This document shows positions 3,344-63,079 of a stretch of DNA of 64,000 nucleotides, in pieces. The notes under the pieces were generated by a model. It was given only the letters and a program-made list of their open reading frames with translations, did no database searches and had not been told where the DNA came from. Position numbers and translations under genes: made by a program. Numbering within the stretch: position 1 is the stretch's first letter; each line of letters starts with the position of its first letter. Where the stretch lies: positions 124,001 through 188,000 of IMG/VR virus record IMGVR_UViG_3300032242_003291, one strand, 5' to 3'.

Positions 3344-3428
3344 CGTCGTCCATGTAGGGTTATTTAATCTTTATGCCAATAAAAATTAGCTTTGGTTTGT
3401 TTCAATAAATATCGTATCTTTGTGTTCT

Positions 3429-4046
3429 ATGAAAGTTATATTTTTAGATAATGACGGAGTAATCTGTTTGGTAAATAATTGGGGAGGACGTTCCAAAAAA
3501 TGGGCGAAGTACCGCTCTGCAAATCCTGAATCAAGTAAATTACTCAGCGAAGCCCCTGTTGATGTAAGATTTGATGATTTTGATAACAAAGCAATCAAAA
3601 TCTTAAACGAAATCTTAGAAGAAACAGGTGCCGAAATTGTGGTATCTTCTGATTGGAGATTTCATGCAACCTTAGAAGAATTAGGAGAATATTACACATC
3701 CCAAGGAATCTCAAAAAAACCAATTGGATTTACAAAAAAATTGGGAGAATGTGACCAACCTGAAAACTTTCCTTGGTCTCGCCATTGGGACTTAGAACAG
3801 TCAAGGTCCTTAGAGATACTTCAATACCTTAAAGACCATCCTGAAATCACCAATTGGGTTGCTGTGGATGACTTAAATATGGGAATACCACAAACCCATG
3901 AAACGTGGGGAGAAATGACTATGGATGATTGGGGTTTAACTAATTTTGTACACACACCACTAGGTAGTGAAGGAATTAAACAAACAGGAATAAAAGAAAA
4001 AATATTAAATAAATTAAATGGAGATATCAATAAACGAGATAGTTAA
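3429..4046 (+). CDS. HAD-family phosphatase of the RNA-repair-associated (Swiss-army-knife HAD) type
   Basis: IFLDNDGV motif I, IVVSSDWR motif II, WVAVDD motif IV. Confidence 0.75.
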   Translation: MKVIFLDNDGVICLVNNWGGRSKKWAKYRSANPESSKLLSEAPVDVRFDDFDNKAIKILNEILEETGAEIVVSSDWRFHATLEELGEYYTSQGISKKPIGFTKKLGECDQPENFPWSRHWDLEQSRSLEILQYLKDHPEITNWVAVDDLNMGIPQTHETWGEMTMDDWGLTNFVHTPLGSEGIKQTGIKEKILNKLNGDINKRDS

Positions 4047-5276: not shown

Positions 5277-6587
5277 ATGAGTAAAGACATTAAACATATA
5301 TTCAAATCATTTGATACAATTCTTAATGAGAATAAATCAATGTTGAATGAGGTTGCAGCGTCAAGTACATCTTTATTTGGTGGTGCATCTGTTGTCGTTC
5401 CTGCAGATGGAAGTCATGCAGGTCAATCAGGATGGCAAAGTAACAACGCATGGGACATTAAATCAGACATCGGAACACCAGTATATGCAATTGCCGCAGG
5501 TACTGTTTTAACATTTACTGATTATGGACCAACACCAGTTCATAAAAATGGTAAAACCTTATTTGGTGCTGGATTCACAGTTGATAGTGACAACAATTTA
5601 CCTGACGTATATTATACTCACTTAGGAGATGTAACAGTTAGACCTGGTACTAAAATTGAATGTGGTCAACTTTTGGGATATGTTTTAGACTTTCCAGGTA
5701 GCGATTACGACCACGTACACATAGGTGTTGAAACTGGTCATAACATTAGAGAATTTCTTAATGCTGACGGTTCATTAAAATGCGGTGGAGGAACGATTCT
5801 TGGTCAGTTATCTAATACAAGTTCTGAGACCCCAACAGAAACTCAACCAAACAAAATTAGTACTGACGATTCAGGTGGAGACCCTTTAGTAGGACAGTTA
5901 GTTGCACCTTTATCAAAAATGTTCAAGTCAGGATTAAAAGAAAATAGAATAACTAAAGAAAAATTCTTTATTCAATTTTGTAATGTTTCTGACCCCAAAG
6001 TCAGTAATGGTCAACAAATAAGTGAAGGACAACTCATAGGAAAAACAACAGAGGATGTTGAAGTATCAAAATTAGATAGTTCATATTATAGAATCAATCT
6101 AACTAAAAATGATTATGATTTTGGTAAAAACGTTAAAAATAATCTTGGTATAATAATCATCCCAAAAGATTCAAACGATAAAATTAAAAGCCCTGTATCA
6201 GGAGTTGTTAATAATACAAGATATAACGCATCATGTAATAATCAAATTACAATTGAATGTTATAAGGAGAACGAACCTCAGTATGAACCTGAAAAGAAAA
6301 AATATAAAGGAGAACCTCAATATAGTGACCCTGTAGTTGCGGCACTAGTAGGGGCACCATTCAAACTGTTGAAGAATAAGTACAATAAAGACACTGGTGA
6401 ATTGGAGCAAAAAAGGTGGGGACGACCAGGTGATGGAAGACCTGTTGACCCATGGATTAAAGATGCGGTAACTGCACCATTCAAAAAAATAGGTGATATC
6501 TTTAGAAAAAAACAAAATGAAGAAGAGGAAAAAAGAAAAGTAAAAAAAGTTAATGAAAATATAGATAGAATTAAAAAACTTTTATAA
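5277..6587 (+). CDS. M23 family peptidase-domain protein
   Basis: DIKSDIGTPVYAIAAG, YYTHL and DHVHIGV zinc-site motifs; degenerate second M23-like domain. Confidence 0.75.
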   Translation: MSKDIKHIFKSFDTILNENKSMLNEVAASSTSLFGGASVVVPADGSHAGQSGWQSNNAWDIKSDIGTPVYAIAAGTVLTFTDYGPTPVHKNGKTLFGAGFTVDSDNNLPDVYYTHLGDVTVRPGTKIECGQLLGYVLDFPGSDYDHVHIGVETGHNIREFLNADGSLKCGGGTILGQLSNTSSETPTETQPNKISTDDSGGDPLVGQLVAPLSKMFKSGLKENRITKEKFFIQFCNVSDPKVSNGQQISEGQLIGKTTEDVEVSKLDSSYYRINLTKNDYDFGKNVKNNLGIIIIPKDSNDKIKSPVSGVVNNTRYNASCNNQITIECYKENEPQYEPEKKKYKGEPQYSDPVVAALVGAPFKLLKNKYNKDTGELEQKRWGRPGDGRPVDPWIKDAVTAPFKKIGDIFRKKQNEEEEKRKVKKVNENIDRIKKLL

Positions 6588-6618
6588 TAAAAAACCCACC
6601 GATTGGTGGGTTTATTTT
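6588..6618. terminator. Bidirectional intrinsic terminator
   Basis: AAAAAACCCACC-GATT-GGTGGGTTTATTTTTT between convergent genes. Confidence 0.8.
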
Positions 6619-7242
6619 TTAGATTACTTCAAACAATTCAGTCTGAGATTTTCTTACTTTTTTATAATGTTGAGTTTCGTCAAGCCAATCTCTTTTTCCA
6701 ATCGGACAAACAACAACACTTTCTGTATCAGTCAATCCTAAGATTTCATTATACTTTGTTTTATCAAAACCTTCCATAGGACAAGCATCAATTCCAACAG
6801 TTGACAATGATGTTAATAAGTTACCTAAAGCTAAATAAATTTGTTTTTCAACCCAAGTACCTTTAGTTGCCTCATCCATAGAGTTGACTGCGTATTTCAT
6901 CATACCTTCATACTCAGCTAACATTTCTTTTGGAACTCCTCTTGTTTCAACAATGTTTTGAACAAACGCATCAACATCTCCATCATTAACATTTTTATTT
7001 TTTACAAAAACTAATAATGCGCTTGAATCAGTAATTTGTGTTTGTCCATAAGATGCCTCTTTAAGAGCATTTCTTTTTTCATTATCCATTACAATTAAAA
7101 CTTTATATGGTTGTAAACCAAATGAAGCAGGTGATAATTGGATAATCTCCTTCACTGTAGTTAATTCTTCGTCAGTTAATTGGTATGTAGCGTTAAATTT
7201 TTTGGTCGCATATCTCCAATTTAATTTTTCAATAATATTCAT
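6619..7242 (-). CDS. NAD(P)H nitroreductase (NfsB/NfnB-like)
   Basis: LNWRYATKKF, LSPASFGLQP, IDACPMEGFD motifs. Confidence 0.9.
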   Translation of the reverse strand: MNIIEKLNWRYATKKFNATYQLTDEELTTVKEIIQLSPASFGLQPYKVLIVMDNEKRNALKEASYGQTQITDSSALLVFVKNKNVNDGDVDAFVQNIVETRGVPKEMLAEYEGMMKYAVNSMDEATKGTWVEKQIYLALGNLLTSLSTVGIDACPMEGFDKTKYNEILGLTDTESVVVCPIGKRDWLDETQHYKKVRKSQTELFEVI

Positions 7243-8249: not shown

Positions 8250-8324
8250 TGGGTGAATAACGGAAATCGTACCCGTGACAACTAAAACCACAATCTAGTG
8301 CTCTACCAACTGAGATATATTCCA
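8250..8324 (-). pseudogene. Degenerate tRNA-His(GUG)
   Basis: Cloverleaf with GTG anticodon, but mismatched pairs 1-72 and 2-71, no G-1, D-stem mismatch, T-loop TACGATT. Confidence 0.7.
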
Positions 8325-9675: not shown

Positions 9676-9748
9676 TGGTGACGGGCGGAATTGAACCGCC
9701 GACACATAGATTTTCAGTCTATTGCTCTACCAACTGAGCTACGTCACC
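9676..9748 (-). tRNA. tRNA-Phe(GAA)
   Basis: ATAGA-CTGAAAA-TCTAT anticodon arm. Confidence 0.95.
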
Positions 9749-27346: not shown

Positions 27347-27429
27347 GACAAGTGAGACTCAACATTCATTTTGATAGTATCTTGGTAATTTACTTTCGCC
27401 TTTAATTTTGAGTCCCTTGTCTTTTTTTT
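27347..27429 (+). ncRNA. Candidate small RNA
   Basis: Follows TACCTTTG promoter box; ends pair (GACAAG/CTTGTC, GACTCAA/TTGAGTC); T8 tract. Confidence 0.5.
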
Positions 27430-27464
27430 GCCAATTTCTCAAATTTACCTATCTTTGTAATGTT

Positions 27465-28124
27465 ATGATAAGAATAGACGAAAATATGCTAACAAATGTG
27501 TGGATAACTTCCGACACTCACTTTTCCCACAAAAATATATGTAGGGGAACTACCGCATGGAGAACTCAAGAAGGTGAAATACCTATCTCACAGACTCGTG
27601 ATTTTTCTACGTTAGAAAAGATGAATGCGACAATAGTTAACAACATCAATCAAAGTGTCGGACAAGATGATATATTAATTCACCTTGGTGACTGGTCGTT
27701 TGGTGGATTTGACCAAATACGCGAATTTTGGGATAGACTTATATGTAAAAACATACACTTGGTTTTAGGTAATCACGACCACCACATAGAAAATAACAGA
27801 GATGGGTCTCAAGGGTTATTCAAATCCGTATCTCACTACAATACACTTGAATTAGGTCAATTTAAATTTCGTTTGATGCACTATCCCATAAGTTCTTGGG
27901 ATGGTCTTAATAAGGGTGTAATGCACTTGCACGGTCACTGCCACCTTCCAACACACATGAGGTTCGGTAAGGGTCAGAGAATGGATGTGGGTATGGATGG
28001 TCACCCTGAATTTAGACCTTATAACGTATATCGTGAAGTAGTACCTTTGTTAAGACACAGAGAGAAACTTTCCGAAATGCCAAATGACCACCACGTAGAA
28101 AGATTATTAAATTCTGATAAGTGA
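27465..28124 (+). CDS. Calcineurin-like metallophosphoesterase
   Basis: TSDTHFSH, HLGDWSF, LGNHD, MHYP, HLHGHCH; start corrected to MIRID. Confidence 0.9.
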   Translation: MIRIDENMLTNVWITSDTHFSHKNICRGTTAWRTQEGEIPISQTRDFSTLEKMNATIVNNINQSVGQDDILIHLGDWSFGGFDQIREFWDRLICKNIHLVLGNHDHHIENNRDGSQGLFKSVSHYNTLELGQFKFRLMHYPISSWDGLNKGVMHLHGHCHLPTHMRFGKGQRMDVGMDGHPEFRPYNVYREVVPLLRHREKLSEMPNDHHVERLLNSDK

Positions 28125-28441
28125 TGACAACGGTAGAATTATTTTATAAACCTCCAAAAGATGAATGCTTCGAGGAACTACGAACAATTTGTATTCGCTT
28201 TTGGAGGTCTTTTGATGAGGTCGAGTATGTGGAAGAAAAGATTAATAGAATAAAGGATTTAACAAACGAAAGTTGTAATTTTGTGATGATGATTCAAATG
28301 ATTCATCCTGTAAGTAGAGAGTTAATTGCAAAATTACTATCTTTGGAGACCCGAAATGAAATTAGTATGAGATTACATGGGTGGGGAACAGAAAACGAAT
28401 TTGATTTTTTCAACATTTGGAATATAGATAACAATTTATGA
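28121..28441 (+). CDS. Hypothetical protein
   Basis: 106-aa ORF in operon. Confidence 0.6.
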   Translation: MMTTVELFYKPPKDECFEELRTICIRFWRSFDEVEYVEEKINRIKDLTNESCNFVMMIQMIHPVSRELIAKLLSLETRNEISMRLHGWGTENEFDFFNIWNIDNNL

Positions 28442-28851
28442 GTGGAGTATTATTTTTAGTTAGAGGACTACCTGGTTCAGGTAAGACATCATTCGCCACA
28501 GCGATTTGGAATGAATATGCTGTTTGTGAAGCCGATAAGTTTTTTTATGATAAAGAAGGGAACTATAACTTTGATGGGTCAAAGTTAAAAGAAGCTCACG
28601 AATGGTGTAAAAAAGAAGTGGAAACCAGAATGATTGACCACCAAAACAATGGACAATATTATCCCGAGATAGCAGTTTCAAATACTTTTACTCAAGAATG
28701 GGAAATGGAAGATTATTTCAAATTAGCTGAAAAATATGGATACAAAGTTGTATCTTTGATTATTGAAAATAGACACGGAAATAAAAGTGTTCATGGAGTA
28801 CCTGACGCTAAAATCCAAATTATGAAAGAAAGATTTGAAATTCAATTATAG
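28438..28851 (+). CDS. P-loop polynucleotide-kinase-like protein
   Basis: VRGLPGSGKTS Walker A, EADKFF, VSNTFTQEWE, HGVPD. Confidence 0.85.
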   Translation: MSGVLFLVRGLPGSGKTSFATAIWNEYAVCEADKFFYDKEGNYNFDGSKLKEAHEWCKKEVETRMIDHQNNGQYYPEIAVSNTFTQEWEMEDYFKLAEKYGYKVVSLIIENRHGNKSVHGVPDAKIQIMKERFEIQL

Positions 28852-28852
28852 T

Positions 28853-29086
28853 ATGATAAACCCATTTTGTTACATTGGTGCTCATAATTGGGAGTACCGT
28901 AAAGAGAAACATAAAGTAGAAAACCATCCTTTGGGTAGAGAATACGTCCGAGTTGTGGTTAGAGAATGTAAGTGGTGCGGACATAGAGAACACCACAGTT
29001 TACCGAGAGTAGGTAGAAAATTTACTCTGTGGAGAGACTTTGACAATTTTGGAAAAGACGACACAATAAAATTTGAACAATTATAA
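28853..29086 (+). CDS. Small Cys/His zinc-binding hypothetical protein
   Basis: C-x-IGAHNW…RECKWCGH. Confidence 0.6.
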   Translation: MINPFCYIGAHNWEYRKEKHKVENHPLGREYVRVVVRECKWCGHREHHSLPRVGRKFTLWRDFDNFGKDDTIKFEQL

Positions 29087-29096
29087 AAACAAACAC

Positions 29097-29318
29097 ATGC
29101 AAACATTAGTATTCAACACAACAACTAAAACCGCAAAACTTTACGTAGATAAGGCCGAGGATTCCGAAATTCTTTATACCTTCAATGACGTACCAACAGT
29201 AAAATTTGAAACCGATTTTTATCAAGTGATGCAAATAGACGGAACTTCAGTAGAAGATAAAAGAGTTCCTGTTGCTCGTTTTCCAATTGCAAACACAAAC
29301 ATGTTAATTAAAAAGTGA
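29097..29318 (+). CDS. Hypothetical protein
   Basis: Start at MQTLVF. Confidence 0.6.
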   Translation: MQTLVFNTTTKTAKLYVDKAEDSEILYTFNDVPTVKFETDFYQVMQIDGTSVEDKRVPVARFPIANTNMLIKK

Positions 29319-30397
29319 TAGTAGAATTAGACATATTAAACAAATACATTAGTGAGGGGTTGGTGGTCAAAAATGACCATCCAACTCTTCCTATTTCTAT
29401 CTACAATTATTCTCGTACTTGTCAGTATGAAAATAAGTGGGATGAAATCACTAAAATGTGTCGTGGTCTCATATTAGACCAAGAAGGGAACGTTATTGCC
29501 AAAGGTTTTAACAAATTCTTCAATATGGAAGAACATCAACCAGAAGAAATCCCAAATGATACATTTGAAGTATTTGAAAAATTAGACGGTTCTTTAGGAA
29601 TATTATTTTGGTACCAAGGAGAATGGATATTATCAACTAAAGGGTCATTTACTTCTAGCCAAGCCGTTAGAGCAAAAGAAATCCTAAAAAAATATAATTT
29701 CCAACCAATACCAAAAGGATATACTACTTTGGTTGAAATCATATATCCTGAAAACAGAATTGTTTGTGATTATGTAGGAGAAGAATCTTTGGTTGTTTTA
29801 TCGATGATAAACAATAGCTCAGGAAAAGAATTGGATTACACTTCTTTGTTGTACATCAGCGATGAGACTCGAATGCCAGTCGTTAAAAAATATGACGCTG
29901 TCGAGGATTATAAGACCCTCAAATCATTAATATCTAAAGACCGTGAAGGTTATGTTGTTCGTTTTAGAAATGGTTTTAGAATGAAGATAAAAGGGGAAGA
30001 ATATGTTCGTCTTCATAGAATCTTGACAGGATTTTCAAATGTGGACATATGGGAATATCTAAAAGACGGAAGAAATATTGATGAATTATTGGACAGAGTT
30101 CCTGACGAATTTGATAAATGGGTCAAAACCACAATCAAAGACCTTAGATATGCAAAAATGAGTATTCAAGAAAATGCTGGTAAGTTATACGATAGTTTTA
30201 TAGAAAACTTAACTGGACCGCCACATTATGGTGAATTACCACCAAAAAAAGAAATTGCTGAATGGGTGATGACTCATGAAGAATTTTTAAGACCTATTTT
30301 ATTCAGAATGTTTGATAATAAGGATTCTTCTGAATATATTTGGAAACTAATTAAACCAAAGTATTCAAAGCCGTTTTGGCAAAAGGAGATTGAATGA
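29315..30397 (+). CDS. RNA ligase 1 family (T4 Rnl1-like)
   Basis: IYNYS, CRGLILD, FNKFFN, EKLDGSLG motif I, EIIYP, REGYVVRF…MKIKGEEY. Confidence 0.9.
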   Translation: MIVELDILNKYISEGLVVKNDHPTLPISIYNYSRTCQYENKWDEITKMCRGLILDQEGNVIAKGFNKFFNMEEHQPEEIPNDTFEVFEKLDGSLGILFWYQGEWILSTKGSFTSSQAVRAKEILKKYNFQPIPKGYTTLVEIIYPENRIVCDYVGEESLVVLSMINNSSGKELDYTSLLYISDETRMPVVKKYDAVEDYKTLKSLISKDREGYVVRFRNGFRMKIKGEEYVRLHRILTGFSNVDIWEYLKDGRNIDELLDRVPDEFDKWVKTTIKDLRYAKMSIQENAGKLYDSFIENLTGPPHYGELPPKKEIAEWVMTHEEFLRPILFRMFDNKDSSEYIWKLIKPKYSKPFWQKEIE

Positions 30398-61584: not shown

Positions 61585-61737
61585 CTAGTGTTTTTGTCTA
61601 ATTAAGGTCAGACAAAGGAAACTATCCATTAAGACCTCCCGTGTTTCATTCAACTTTTTTCTAATTTGTAGCGCGGAGAAGAAAAGTGTTAGGGCGAGTA
61701 TGGGGAACCACCACTGAAAAAACATTCCGCTGTCCAT
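61585..61737 (-). CDS. Possible 50-aa hydrophobic peptide on a structured transcript
   Basis: MDSGMFFQWWFPILALTLFFSALQIRKKLNETREVLMDSFLCLTLIRQKH directly after TATCTTTG; atypical G/C-ending codons. Confidence 0.3.
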   Translation of the reverse strand: MDSGMFFQWWFPILALTLFFSALQIRKKLNETREVLMDSFLCLTLIRQKH

Positions 61738-61828
61738 TTCTTTTCAAAGATAAGATAAGTCTTTCAACTTGTCAAATTCTTTTGGCGAAAATTCCGAAAT
61801 AAAACGTCTTTATTCCGAAGGACTTTCG

Positions 61829-61920
61829 TGGTTGGGAGTGGAATCGAACCACTGGCACACCGCTTTCACACAGCTGCTCTACCTATGTTAAGTCACCTTA
61901 ACAACTGAGCTACCTCAACC
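61829..61920 (-). ncRNA. tRNA-like RNA (Phe-like GAA) with extra D-loop hairpin and 6-nt anticodon loop
   Basis: GGTTGAG/CCCAACC acceptor, GCTC/GAGC D-stem, TGTTAAG-GTGA-CTTAACA insert, AGTGG-TTCGATT-CCACT T-arm. Confidence 0.75.
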
Positions 61921-62064
61921 ATAATATTTCTAAGAACTATTATCGAGATTTCAAACCATTTGGTGTAGTAAACTTGTTACTCTCACTTCAGGTACATTTT
62001 TATTGTCCTCCCGATTTCTATACAAAGATAAGAACTTTTTTACAAACCGTCAAATCTTTTTTTC

Positions 62065-62112
62065 TGAGTTTGGATACCGAGTATCTTTCATCACCTATAA
62101 GTTCCAAACTCA
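62065..62112 (-). ncRNA. Candidate short hairpin RNA after a host-type promoter
   Basis: Perfect 10-bp TGAGTTTGGA/TCCAAACTCA stem; TATCTTTG box at 62116-62123. Confidence 0.4.
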
Positions 62113-62134
62113 TTACAAAGATATAAAAAACTTT

Positions 62135-62389
62135 TTAATTAAACAACATCCATCCCAACTTATTTTGTTCTTGATATTGAGAATAAGTACATTTACGTAA
62201 AGACTTATAATCAGGTCTTAATTTTACATGTTCAGGATATTTCTTTTCAGATTCAATCCTTTCTTTCATGATACGTTTATATGCTTCTTTCTTACTCGAA
62301 GCCCATACATCGTTAAAACCACCACCAATCCAATTGAATAAATAAAGATATTCTCCTGTTGGACTTCTGAAAAGTTTTTCTTTTGTCAT
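62135..62389 (-). CDS. Hypothetical protein
   Basis: 84-aa ORF after TATCTTTG box at 62411-62418. Confidence 0.7.
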   Translation of the reverse strand: MTKEKLFRSPTGEYLYLFNWIGGGFNDVWASSKKEAYKRIMKERIESEKKYPEHVKLRPDYKSLRKCTYSQYQEQNKLGWMLFN

Positions 62390-62588
62390 ATTGTTTCTCT
62401 ATTTGTTTCACAAAGATAAGAACTATTTCTGAATCCACCAAACTTTTTTTTAAGTACAGGGTGGGAATTTTTCCAGTCTCCCACCCCGTGGCTTTTGAGT
62501 ATTTTAGAATCAGAATACAAATATAGAAAGTATTTTTTACATCACCAAATTTTTTTTGAAAGATAGTATTTATTAAAAAATCTAATAC

Positions 62589-63041: not shown

Positions 63042-63079
63042 TTTTTGGTGAATTCACACAAAAATAATATCTTTGTATT

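What the first reader, a model, noticed from the sequence alone, without database searches (positions are those of the whole stretch)
61829..61920. Isolated tRNA-like RNA with an extra hairpin in the D-loop and a shortened anticodon loop
Seen: acceptor, D- and T-arms are near-canonical, but a perfect 7-bp hairpin (TGTTAAG-GTGA-CTTAACA) is inserted between the D-loop AG and GG, and the anticodon arm is GCTGT-GTGAAA-GCGGT (6-nt loop, three G-U pairs). A normal tRNA-Phe exists at 9676. A perfectly paired insert argues against simple decay. Inference: a repurposed tRNA mimic (decoy for anticodon nucleases or uncharged-tRNA sensors, or a protein ligand).
Basis: partly seen in the sequence, partly recalled or inferred. 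Interest (0 to 1): 0.6.

Follow-up and report, generated by a model that had tools for sequence, protein, structure and literature searches.

The report
Phage tRNA-Phe look-alike with extra hairpin
A large uncultured phage carries a conserved RNA gene derived from tRNA-Phe, with an extra hairpin in the D-loop and a wrong-sized anticodon loop; it belongs to an apparently undescribed family that probably acts as a tRNA mimic rather than an ordinary decoder.

Summary
A 92-nt tRNA-like RNA lies on the minus strand at 61920..61829. It has a 7-bp hairpin inserted after D-loop position 16 and a 6-nt loop GUGAAA. One correction: the acceptor stem is 7 bp plus a one-base bulge, not a mismatch. ARAGORN does not call it, and the Rfam tRNA model scores it below threshold.

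It is not a decayed tRNA. Pattern scans found at least 13 close and 19 more distant sequence variants, all in viral or metagenome contigs and none in 185,579 genomes. All five helices are kept through compensatory changes. The hairpin sequence is replaced completely between clades while its pairing is kept. GAA, A73 and U20, the marks PheRS reads on tRNA-Phe, are invariant or nearly so. The loop, however, is 6 or 8 nt. U33 is C in most of the distant clade, and stem mismatches are tolerated.

The gene has its own Bacteroidota-type promoter and a terminator-like hairpin. In the distant clade it is flanked by Y-RNA-like tRNA mimics and lies near GOLLD RNA, SmpB and tmRNA. The window also encodes an RNA-repair gene set.

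Best reading: a tRNA-Phe mimic that is processed like a tRNA and recognised by PheRS or a nuclease, but does not decode normally. The function is untested. It is a new variant of a known kind.

The parts
61829..61920 (-). tRNA-Phe-derived RNA gene, 92 nt. G1 is at 61920 and discriminator A73 at 61829. CCA is not encoded.
   Evidence: Sequence. The family covariance model R1 scores it 113 bits; the next best hit in the window is the canonical tRNA-Phe at 57 bits. Homologues appear.
61886..61903 (-). Hairpin of 7 bp with a GUGA loop, inserted in the D-loop between U16 and position 17.
   Evidence: All 7 pairs show compensatory changes in the family. In the MAFFT-only alignment of close kin, 3 of 7 do.
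61915..61915 (-). Single bulged base (A) in the 5' strand of the acceptor stem, after base pair 5.
   Evidence: In the family alignments this base is A, U or C in the close clade and absent in the distant clade.
61859..61874 (-). Anticodon-arm equivalent: a 5-bp stem with three G.U pairs and the 6-nt loop GUGAAA. The invariant GAA is at 61865-61867.
   Evidence: GAA is present in 35 of 35 relatives, and the loop is 6 or 8 nt.
61837..61853 (-). Canonical T-arm (AGUGG-UUCGAUU-CCACU), preceded by the tRNA-Phe-type variable loop GUGCC at 61854-61858.
62023..62054 (-). Promoter-like site of the Bacteroidota type (TTTG-N20-TATCTTTG), about 100 nt upstream of G1.
   Evidence: 21 such sites in the window against 5.6 expected from shuffles. 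The site is conserved in relatives, and in some of them it lies about 10 nt from G1.
61921..62016 (-). 5' leader (block E2) between the promoter and the RNA. Its closing stem AUCGGGA/UCUCGAU covaries in relatives.
   Evidence: (present in WIN, L097, L026 and L120, partly in L053) and the fold.
61786..61828 (-). Terminator-like hairpin of about 18 bp that starts directly after A73.
   Evidence: Fold: -13.8 kcal/mol, z = -2.13. Its position is conserved and its sequence changes while staying paired in relatives.
62065..62123 (-). Block E1: a conserved hairpin RNA behind a second TAnnTTTG box (62116-62123). In several relatives it lies only about 15 nt upstream of the tRNA-like RNA.
   Evidence: its core motif is found in 18 loci, all from the close clade; fold.
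62135..62389 (-). Conserved 84-aa protein of unknown function (here called c0), encoded just upstream on the same strand.
   Evidence: Found upstream in 14 loci of both clades. It has 151 homologous clusters, all unnamed, and lies inside tRNA clusters in more distant phages. No Pfam, PHROG or PDB-fold match.
9676..9748 (-). Canonical tRNA-Phe(GAA) of the same phage, listed for comparison.
   Evidence: 76.8 bits; aligned with the tRNA-like RNA.
27408..30397 (+). RNA-repair gene set: Metallophos phosphoesterase (27408-28124), P-loop kinase AAA_33 (28438-28851) and a T4 Rnl1-type RNA ligase (29315-30397). This is context only, not part of the RNA gene.
   Evidence: Pfam matches. A HAD_SAK_2 RNA-repair domain is also encoded at 3420-4046.

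Best explanation
This is a stand-alone, expressed RNA gene derived from tRNA-Phe, and a member of a conserved phage family. It works as a tRNA-Phe mimic, not as a routine elongator tRNA.

Shown:
- The cloverleaf, the D-loop hairpin and the odd anticodon arm are kept by selection.
- The tRNA elbow (G18 G19 and the T-loop) and a free acceptor end with A73 are kept.
- The universal phenylalanine identity nucleotides G34 A35 A36 A73, plus U20, are kept.
- The gene has its own promoter-like site and terminator-like hairpin.

Inferred:
- RNase P and 3' trimming with CCA addition cut it out like a tRNA.
- Proteins that read the tRNA-Phe anticodon and elbow still recognise it. PheRS is one such protein, so the RNA is probably charged. 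A host nuclease directed at tRNA-Phe would be another.
- The 6- or 8-nt loop, the weak stem, the acceptor bulge and the bulky hairpin at the corner of the L shape keep it out of efficient normal decoding.

My preferred specific role is in the phage-host conflict over tRNA. The RNA would act as a decoy or competitor that soaks up a factor directed at tRNA-Phe, which spares the phage's normal tRNA-Phe.
For: - Family and covariation. A MAFFT alignment of 12 close kin gives 96.7% paired cells, against about 44% when partners are slid, and 7 pairs with double changes. A model-fitted alignment of 35 sequences gives 21 of 28 pairs with double changes, including all 7 hairpin pairs. A gap-free alignment of 12 distant kin gives 95.4% paired against about 48%.
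- Hairpin loops. The loops are stable tetraloops of varying sequence (GUGA, GUAA, GCGA, UUCG, UUUA), so shape rather than sequence is selected.
- Identity marks. GAA is in 35/35, A73 in 34/35 and GGUA (U20) in 35/35. These are the conserved Phe identity set (PMC9976931).
- Closest window tRNA is tRNA-Phe: 57 bits against 37 or less for the others.
- Signs against ordinary decoding. The loop is 6 nt in the close clade and 8 nt in the distant clade. Position 33 is C in most of the distant clade. 27:43 is unpaired in 9/12 close kin and 51:63 in 6/12 distant kin. A normal tRNA-Phe exists at 9676-9748.
- Transcription unit: promoter and terminator-like hairpin, both conserved in kin.
- Context. In the distant clade, YrlA-like tRNA mimics abut it, and GOLLD, SmpB and tmRNA lie nearby. 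The window encodes an Rnl1-type ligase, a kinase and a phosphoesterase. In T4, the comparable healing and sealing enzymes repair nuclease-cut tRNA (my own knowledge).
- Distribution. Found only in viral or metagenome contigs, none in the genome collection.
Against: - There is no expression, processing or charging data.
- Strict conservation of GAA with a purine or C after it is also what a decoding tRNA would show.
- Relatives with the same kind of hairpin keep a canonical 7-nt Phe loop (L117, L090, L211), so the hairpin is compatible with normal tRNAs.
- An 8-nt loop with the extra base 5' of the anticodon still binds the ribosomal A site in tRNA-SufJ (PMC4238358).
- No nuclease directed at tRNA-Phe is known to me, and none was identified here.
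- The RNA-repair genes are 30 kb away and may be unrelated.
- The 35-sequence alignment was fitted to the model, which favours the modelled structure.
Confidence: 0.45

Rival explanations
1. It is still a working tRNA-Phe. Its reshaped anticodon loop and D-loop hairpin make it resistant to a host tRNA-cleaving defence, so it replaces host tRNA-Phe during infection. It would be an extreme form of the known anticodon-loop escape mutations in phage tRNAs.
For: - GAA, A73, U20, the elbow and the acceptor end are all conserved.
- Kin with the hairpin plus a canonical loop exist, as do hairpin-bearing Val and Lys tRNAs (L117, L090, L211, L093, L038).
- Phage tRNAs are known to escape anticodon nucleases through loop mutations (PMC10264068; PMC11464382).
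- The window encodes RNA-repair enzymes.
Against: - Loop size differs between clades (6 against 8 nt), whereas decoding geometry is normally fixed.
- C33 in most of the distant clade removes the U-turn uridine.
- The acceptor bulge and T-stem mismatches would weaken EF-Tu binding (inference).
- The phage already has a canonical tRNA-Phe with a normal loop.
Confidence: 0.22
2. It is a recoding tRNA. It is charged with Phe and shifts the reading frame at particular UUY sites in phage genes, +1 for the 8-nt loops and possibly -1 or doublet reading for the 6-nt loops.
For: In the distant clade the extra base lies 5' of the anticodon, as in the +1 frameshift suppressor tRNA-SufJ (C31.5 insertion; PMC4238358). 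The GAA anticodon is invariant.
Against: - The window's own RNA has a 6-nt loop, not 8 nt.
- The two clades would shift in opposite directions although the phages are syntenic.
- No frameshift-dependent gene was identified, though the search for one was not systematic.
- A general Phe frameshifter would damage all proteins.
Confidence: 0.08
3. It is mainly a processing signal. The tRNA-shaped module recruits RNase P and RNase Z to cut neighbouring small RNAs (E1/E2 here, Y-RNA-like RNAs in kin) out of a common transcript.
For: In several kin the upstream RNA ends only 8-15 nt from G1, and in L018, L137 and L054 a second Y-RNA-like element starts about 8 nt after the 3' end.
Against: This does not explain the invariant GAA, A73 and U20, nor the conserved hairpin. 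In the window and in several kin the RNA has its own promoter directly upstream.
Confidence: 0.1
4. The hairpin is an intervening sequence. It is cut out and the halves are rejoined, for instance by the phage ligase, which yields a tRNA with a normal D-loop.
For: Removing the hairpin would leave a normal 9-nt D-loop, AGU-UAGGUA. The phage has an Rnl1-type ligase and a kinase/phosphatase set. Archaeal MAG hits in the same scan have D-loop inserts that are probably introns (L192, L210).
Against: - There is no bulge-helix-bulge motif or conserved junction sequence, and no known bacterial enzyme for such splicing.
- The hairpins end in stable tetraloops, typical of permanent structural elements.
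- The abnormal anticodon loop would remain after removal.
Confidence: 0.04
5. It is a decaying tRNA-Phe duplicate with no function.
For: ARAGORN does not call it and Rfam scores it below threshold. A deviant tRNA-His-like copy also exists at 8255-8322.
Against: More than 30 sequence variants keep every helix through compensatory changes and keep GAA and A73. The promoter and terminator-like hairpin are conserved too.
Confidence: 0.02

Closest known systems
Phage-encoded tRNAs that escape tRNA-targeting defences (anticodon-loop variants; T5 tRNA-Lys against PARIS)
   Same: It is phage-encoded, derived from a normal isoacceptor, and altered in the anticodon loop. The phage also carries RNA-repair enzymes (PMC10264068, PMC11464382).
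   Different: The known cases are point substitutions in a 7-nt loop of otherwise canonical tRNAs. Here the loop length itself is changed (6 or 8 nt), a structured hairpin is added to the D-loop, and the acceptor stem has a bulge. I found no D-loop insert or loop-size change in PMC10264068.
Bacterial and phage Y RNAs (YrlA; D. radiodurans Yrn1), tRNA mimics bound by Ro60/Rsr
   Same: They are tRNA-derived non-decoding RNAs with true D- and T-arms. [quoted passage not shown] Typhimurium YrlA). Yrn1 is modelled with a 5-bp 'anticodon' stem and a 6-nt loop (PMC4201824). YrlA-like elements directly flank the distant-clade members.
   Different: This RNA has the normal tRNA order, a free 7-bp acceptor end with A73, and no long Ro-binding stem. 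There is no YrlA model hit at the locus and no Ro60/TROVE gene among the window ORFs scanned. The conserved GAA is in the anticodon position.
+1 frameshift suppressor tRNAs with 8-nt anticodon loops (tRNA-SufJ)
   Same: The distant clade has an 8-nt loop with the extra base 5' of the anticodon, as in SufJ (PMC4238358).
   Different: The window's RNA and its close kin have a 6-nt loop. Most of the distant clade lacks U33. These are natural, conserved genes, not laboratory suppressor mutants.
Archaeal tRNAs with non-canonical introns in the D-loop
   Same: An insert interrupts the D-loop of a tRNA gene. Archaeal examples appeared in the same scan (L192, L210).
   Different: There is no bulge-helix-bulge motif. 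The host context is bacterial, with Bacteroidota-type promoters. The insert is a plain tetraloop hairpin.
tRNAs next to or inside GOLLD RNA loci of phages
   Same: Distant-clade members lie 0.6-1.0 kb upstream of a GOLLD RNA on the same strand. GOLLD is known to sit near tRNA islands (bioRxiv 10.1101/2024.12.08.627333).
   Different: GOLLD has its own promoter-like site there. No GOLLD is present in this 64-kb window. The reported GOLLD-linked tRNAs are not described as having these features.

Membership tests
Canonical elongator tRNA (tRNA-Phe) | Cloverleaf with 7-bp acceptor, 4-bp D-stem, 5-bp anticodon stem, 5-bp T-stem, G18 G19 and a T-loop | tested here: met
   All stems are present and covary. 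GGUA and UUCGAUU are conserved. One exception: a single-base bulge in the acceptor 5' strand.
Canonical elongator tRNA (tRNA-Phe) | 7-nt anticodon loop with U33 and a purine at 37 | tested here: not met
   The loop is GUGAAA (6 nt) in the window. The family has 6 or 8 nt, and most of the distant clade has C at position 33.
Canonical elongator tRNA (tRNA-Phe) | D-loop of about 7-11 nt | tested here: not met
   The D-loop is 27 nt because of the 18-nt hairpin.
Canonical elongator tRNA (tRNA-Phe) | Recognised by standard tRNA detectors (Rfam RF00005 gathering score; ARAGORN) | tested here: not met
   20.8 bits against a threshold of 29, and only a partial alignment. ARAGORN makes no call. Distant kin reach 38-50 bits in Rfam, but ARAGORN mislabels them as Pro or Thr.
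Canonical elongator tRNA (tRNA-Phe) | Phenylalanine identity set G34 A35 A36 A73 (plus U20 and U59 in E. coli) | tested here: met
   GAA 35/35, A73 34/35, U20 35/35. U59 is present in the close clade only. The identity set is taken from PMC9976931.
Canonical elongator tRNA (tRNA-Phe) | Aminoacylation, EF-Tu binding and ribosomal decoding | not testable with these tools
   Needs biochemistry.
Y RNA / YrlA | Match to the YrlA covariance model | tested here: not met
   No YrlA hit in 61600-62150 even at E up to 10. The neighbours of the distant kin do hit at 31-42 bits, below the threshold of 69.
Y RNA / YrlA | Long terminal stem holding the Ro60 site, with the tRNA-like module in T - acceptor-like hairpin - D order | tested here: not met
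   The order is the normal tRNA order, with an open 7-bp acceptor end.
Y RNA / YrlA | GNCGAAN0-1G motif (proposed Rsr contact) | tested here: inconclusive
   The loop reads ..CGAAAG in most distant kin and ..UGAAAG in the window. This is a partial resemblance only, and the motif is in a different place in the RNA.
Y RNA / YrlA | Encoded within about 4 kb of a Ro60/TROVE gene on the same strand | tested here: not met
   No TROVE match among the neighbouring ORFs or the other window ORFs scanned. Not every small ORF was scanned.
+1 frameshift suppressor tRNA (SufJ type) | 8-nt anticodon loop with an insertion 5' of the anticodon | tested here: not met
   The window RNA has 6 nt. The feature is met only by the distant clade.
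Intron-containing tRNA (archaeal type) | Bulge-helix-bulge motif at the insert boundaries | tested here: not met
   The insert is a simple perfect hairpin without flanking 3-nt bulges.
tRNA pseudogene | No selection on structure; unique or decaying copy | tested here: not met
   Conserved with compensatory changes in more than 30 variants.
Phage attachment-site tRNA fragment | Partial tRNA copy matching a host tRNA gene | tested here: not met
   The RNA is full-length and has its own promoter. No copy was found in the genome collection. The 112 trivial pattern hits, by contrast, are partial repeats next to normal tRNAs.

The most novel reading that the evidence does not exclude
These RNAs would form a previously unrecognised class of phage tRNA mimics. 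They would be chargeable with Phe, or at least bound by PheRS, but barred from normal decoding. In kin they would be made together with Y-RNA-like mimics, GOLLD and tmRNA/SmpB. Their job would be to manipulate host tRNA-directed immunity or RNA surveillance, or to donate Phe outside the ribosome. The D-loop hairpin would be a general 'phage mark' that also occurs on decoding tRNAs of other specificities.
Probability: 0.35. Interest if true: 0.85.

Novelty: new variant of a known kind. Interest (0 to 1): 0.7.

Why it matters
Phage tRNAs have recently been recognised as weapons against tRNA-cleaving immunity. So far only point changes in otherwise normal tRNAs have been described in the papers I found.

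This family shows a much deeper remodelling that evolution has kept: a structural hairpin added at the corner of the L shape, a changed anticodon-loop size and an acceptor bulge, all with the phenylalanine identity marks preserved. It gives a concrete, testable object for three questions:
- which parts of a tRNA are needed for which partner (PheRS, EF-Tu, ribosome, nucleases, RNase P);
- whether phages make dedicated tRNA decoys;
- what the non-coding RNA islands of large phages (Y-RNA-like RNAs, GOLLD, tmRNA) do together.

It also exposes an annotation gap. Standard tRNA finders either miss these genes or mislabel them as tRNA-Pro or tRNA-Thr.

Tried and rejected
- Cultured phages. No DNA match for the locus or for the neighbouring 4.4 kb, and no protein match for the 84-aa neighbour, in the INPHARED phage collection.
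- Rfam. Apart from the weak tRNA hit, only chance-level matches at the locus (CRISPR-DR54, a Tetrahymena snoRNA, SpR10).
- Neighbouring proteins. Pfam and PHROGs gave only a pirin-like protein and unknowns.
- The 84-aa protein. The structure model was confident (pLDDT 90.5), but Foldseek against the PDB gave nothing at E <= 0.001. The VIA-align searches were not run.
- Literature. Eight full-text searches found no description of a D-loop hairpin or a 6/8-nt-loop tRNA-Phe in phages. Subscription journals are not covered.
- Pseudogene, attP fragment and archaeal-type intron readings: rejected for the reasons given in the membership table.
- ARAGORN's alternative reading of distant kin, which puts the anticodon in the GG region of the D-loop (tRNA-Pro or tRNA-Thr). 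Rejected because it ignores the covarying helices.
- A GNRA-tetraloop reading of the loop (U/C-GAAA-G). It fits most members but fails for GAAC-loop members (L016, L057), so it is kept only as a remark.
- Most pattern hits were irrelevant: 112 of 168 unique sequences are normal tRNAs preceded by a short repeat of their own 5' part.
- A systematic search for frameshift-dependent genes was not done.

Full report
**What is there.** The window is part of IMGVR_UViG_3300032242_003291, a 317,259-bp viral contig. GC content is about 32%. Read on the minus strand, bases 61920 to 61829 give a 92-nt cloverleaf:
- acceptor 5' strand GGUUG-A-GG;
- U8 A9;
- D-stem GCUC/GAGC;
- a D-loop made of AGU, a perfect 7-bp hairpin with a GUGA loop (61903..61886), then UAGGUA;
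- A26;
- an anticodon arm with stem GCUGU/GCGGU (three G.U pairs) and the 6-nt loop GUGAAA;
- variable loop GUGCC;
- T-arm AGUGG-UUCGAUU-CCACU;
- acceptor 3' strand CCCAACC and A73, with no encoded CCA.

One correction applies: the acceptor helix is 7 bp with a single bulged base, not a helix with a mismatch. ARAGORN finds 19 tRNAs in the window but not this one. The Rfam tRNA model gives only a partial alignment at 20.8 bits, below its threshold of 29. The minimum-free-energy fold recovers the acceptor, hairpin and T-arm, with z = -2.24.

**It belongs to a family.** I scanned for a D-arm with an oversized loop followed by a T-loop.
- Of 168 unique sequences, 112 are trivial: normal tRNAs preceded by a short repeat of their own 5' part.
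- The other 56 have a true D-loop insert.
- Among these, 13 variants form a close clade that includes the window. It has acceptor GGUUG-N-GG/CCCAACC, hairpins of 6-8 bp and a 6-nt loop N-U-GAA-A/C.
- About 19 variants form a more distant clade. It has acceptor GGUAUUR, hairpin GGGAGA-UUUA-UCUUCC or similar, and an 8-nt loop that is mostly AACGAAAG.
- A few outliers exist (L004, L076, L050).
- All of these come from viral or metagenome contigs, several of them 100-320 kb. None of the genome-collection hits belongs to either clade.

**Selection on structure.**
- In a plain MAFFT alignment of 12 close kin, 96.7% of cells are standard pairs, against 40-49% when partners are slid. Seven pairs show changes on both sides, three of them in the hairpin.
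- A gap-free MAFFT alignment of 12 distant kin gives 95.4% against 43-50%.
- A covariance model built from the close clade was used to align 35 sequences of both clades and the outliers. There, 21 of 28 pairs have compensatory changes, including all seven hairpin pairs. This last alignment is fitted to the model and so leans towards it. The unfitted alignments agree.
- The hairpin keeps no sequence between clades. It ends in stable tetraloops of several kinds, so its shape and position (after U16, two or three bases before G18) are what is conserved.

**What is invariant, and what is not.** GAA in the anticodon position is present in 35 of 35 sequences, A73 in 34 of 35 and GGUA (U20) in 35 of 35. 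The variable loop is GUGCC or GUGUC, as in tRNA-Phe. G34 A35 A36 A73 is the universally conserved phenylalanine identity set, with U20 and U59 added in E. coli (PMC9976931). With the family model, the window's next best hit is its canonical tRNA-Phe at 57 bits, against 37 or less for other tRNAs.

By contrast, several features that ribosomal decoding normally fixes are not kept:
- the loop is 6 nt in one clade and 8 nt in the other;
- position 33 is C in most of the distant clade;
- pair 27:43 is unpaired in 9 of 12 close kin;
- T-stem pair 51:63 is unpaired in 6 of 12 distant kin;
- the close clade has the acceptor bulge.

Three relatives combine a D-loop hairpin with a canonical CUGAAAA or CUGAACA loop (L117, L090, L211). 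Hairpin-bearing tRNAs with Val (CAC) and Lys (UUU) anticodons also exist (L093, L038). The hairpin alone therefore does not exclude decoding.

**Transcription unit and surroundings.**
- The pattern TTTG-N17-22-TAnnTTTG matches what I recall of Bacteroidota promoters. It occurs 21 times in the window against 5.6 expected.
- One copy (62054..62023, minus strand) lies about 100 nt upstream of G1. In some kin the box lies only about 10 nt from G1.
- A hairpin of about 18 bp starts right after A73. Its position is conserved while its sequence changes.
- The flanks hold further conserved non-coding blocks (E1, E2, E3). An 84-aa protein gene lies upstream in 14 loci of both clades.
- That protein has 151 unnamed homologous clusters and lies inside tRNA clusters in more distant phages. 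Its confident model has no PDB match by Foldseek.
- In the distant clade the RNA sits in a dense RNA island. A YrlA-like element (31-42 bits, below threshold; T-arm, capped acceptor-like hairpin and D-arm in permuted order) abuts its 5' end in three of the four loci scanned (L018, L054, L105) and lies 144 nt upstream in L022. A second similar element sometimes follows its 3' end. A GOLLD RNA (288-305 bits) follows 0.6-1.0 kb downstream behind its own promoter-like site. SmpB and a tmRNA are within about 3 kb.
- None of these is present in the 64-kb window.
- The window does encode a phosphoesterase, a P-loop kinase and a T4 Rnl1-type RNA ligase (27408-30397), and a HAD domain of 'Swiss Army Knife' RNA-repair proteins (3420-4046). 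In T4 the comparable enzymes repair tRNA cut by an anticodon nuclease (my own knowledge).

**Interpretation.** What is shown is a conserved, independently transcribed RNA gene derived from tRNA-Phe. It keeps what RNase P, the CCA enzyme and PheRS need, and it relaxes what EF-Tu and the ribosome need.

I infer that it is a tRNA-Phe mimic. The most likely role is a decoy or competitor for a factor that reads the tRNA-Phe anticodon and elbow, within the known conflict between phage tRNAs and tRNA-cleaving defences (PMC10264068, PMC11464382, PMC13056530). I give this reading a confidence of 0.45.

The rivals, with their confidences, are:
- a still-decoding, cleavage-resistant tRNA-Phe (0.22);
- an RNase P/Z processing signal for the flanking small RNAs (0.10);
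- a frameshifting tRNA, since the 8-nt loops resemble tRNA-SufJ (PMC4238358) (0.08);
- a spliced insert (0.04);
- a pseudogene (0.02).

**Comparison with known families.** It is not a canonical tRNA, because the loop size, the D-loop size and the detector scores all fail. It is not a YrlA-type Y RNA, because it has no model hit, no terminal Ro-binding stem and no nearby Ro60 gene. It does share with Y RNAs the principle of a tRNA-derived mimic. Yrn1 of D. radiodurans is also modelled with a 6-nt 'anticodon' loop (PMC4201824). It is not an archaeal-type intron-containing tRNA, because it has no bulge-helix-bulge motif. Eight full-text searches found no description of such RNAs.

I rate it a new variant of a known kind (phage tRNA or tRNA mimic), real and conserved, with its function open.

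Noticed in passing
window 62065-62123 (-), 61921-62016 (-), about 61600-61745 (-): Three conserved non-coding blocks (E1, E2, E3) flank the tRNA-like RNA. E1 and E3 each sit behind a Bacteroidota-type promoter box of their own; E2 is the leader behind the promoter of the tRNA-like RNA. E1 is a hairpin whose outer stem covaries, and its core motif occurs only in loci of the close clade. The closing stem of E2 covaries. E3 overlaps a 50-aa ORF (61585-61737), but indels in kin argue that it is non-coding. None matches Rfam.
   Followed up: partly
window 8255-8322 (-): A second, deviant tRNA-His-like gene (anticodon GUG, T-loop UACGAUU, poor acceptor pairing) lies next to the canonical tRNA-His. 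Rfam scores it 36.6 bits and ARAGORN does not call it. The phage therefore carries deviant extra copies of at least two tRNAs (His and Phe).
   Followed up: partly
window 27408-30397 (+) and 3420-4046 (+): An RNA-repair gene set: Metallophos phosphoesterase, AAA_33 P-loop kinase, T4 Rnl1-type RNA ligase and a separate HAD_SAK_2 protein. It suggests the phage meets RNA-cleaving, probably tRNA-cleaving, host defences.
   Followed up: partly
L018:6011-6106(-), L054:7536-7637(-), L105:2048-2158(-), L022:5623-5737(+): YrlA (Y-RNA-like) matches below threshold lie next to the distant-clade tRNA-Phe-like RNAs. The parts appear in the order variable loop plus T-arm, capped acceptor-like hairpin, D-arm, all enclosed by a terminal stem. 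In L018, L137 and L054 a second similar element follows the 3' end. No Ro60 gene was seen in these loci.
   Followed up: partly
L018:4880-5286(-), L054:6062-6469(-), L022:7008-7433(+); tmRNA at L022:9465-9859(-), L054:3597-3993(+), L018:3405-3816(+); SmpB at L018:4366-4803(-): The distant-clade phages carry a GOLLD RNA (288-305 bits) with its own promoter-like site, an SmpB gene and a tmRNA, all within about 3 kb of the tRNA-Phe-like RNA. Together these form a dense island of translation-related RNAs.
   Followed up: partly
L007:6442-6520, 6525-6606, 6670-6768 (416-kb viral contig); L050:552-636, 719-809: Arrays of tRNA-shaped RNAs in which the anticodon arm is replaced by a long hairpin capped with a UUCG or UCGG tetraloop, or carries an insert. 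They cannot decode, so they look like further kinds of phage tRNA mimics.
   Followed up: no
L093, L038, L117, L090, L211, L074, L108, L046, L063 (coordinates): D-loop hairpin inserts at the same site (after position 16) occur in tRNA-like genes of other specificities, such as Val CAC and Lys UUU, and in Phe genes with a normal 7-nt loop. L211 is in a Pyrinomonadaceae MAG contig. Several others have 6-nt loops with other 'anticodons' (L007, L046, L063).
   Followed up: partly
L230-L234 (for example L230:4001-4252): Homologues of the 84-aa protein (window 62135-62389) lie inside tRNA gene clusters in more distant phages. This small protein therefore keeps company with tRNA or tRNA-like genes across lineages. 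Its fold has no PDB match by Foldseek.
   Followed up: partly
L018:5918-6009, L022:5881-5972, L105:1967-2058, L054:7446-7538, L097:7284-7376: ARAGORN labels distant-clade members as tRNA-Pro(UGG) or tRNA-Thr(GGU), and one close-clade member as tRNA-??? with a 2-base anticodon. It does so by misreading the D-loop region. Public annotations of such phages are likely to be wrong in the same way.
   Followed up: yes
Genome-contig hits such as L155, L158, L169, L172 and L178 (Marinobacter spp.): Many bacterial tRNA genes, notably tRNA-Phe of Marinobacter, are preceded by a short repeat of their own 5' part (UAGCUCAAC and following bases). This accounts for 112 of the 168 unique pattern hits. They may be remnants of integration sites or tandem-array junctions.
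   Followed up: no
window, 21 sites (for example 62411-62442, 62518-62549, 63044-63075): The pattern TTTG-N17-22-TAnnTTTG is about fourfold enriched over shuffles. This points to a Bacteroidota host for this otherwise unassignable phage.
   Followed up: partly
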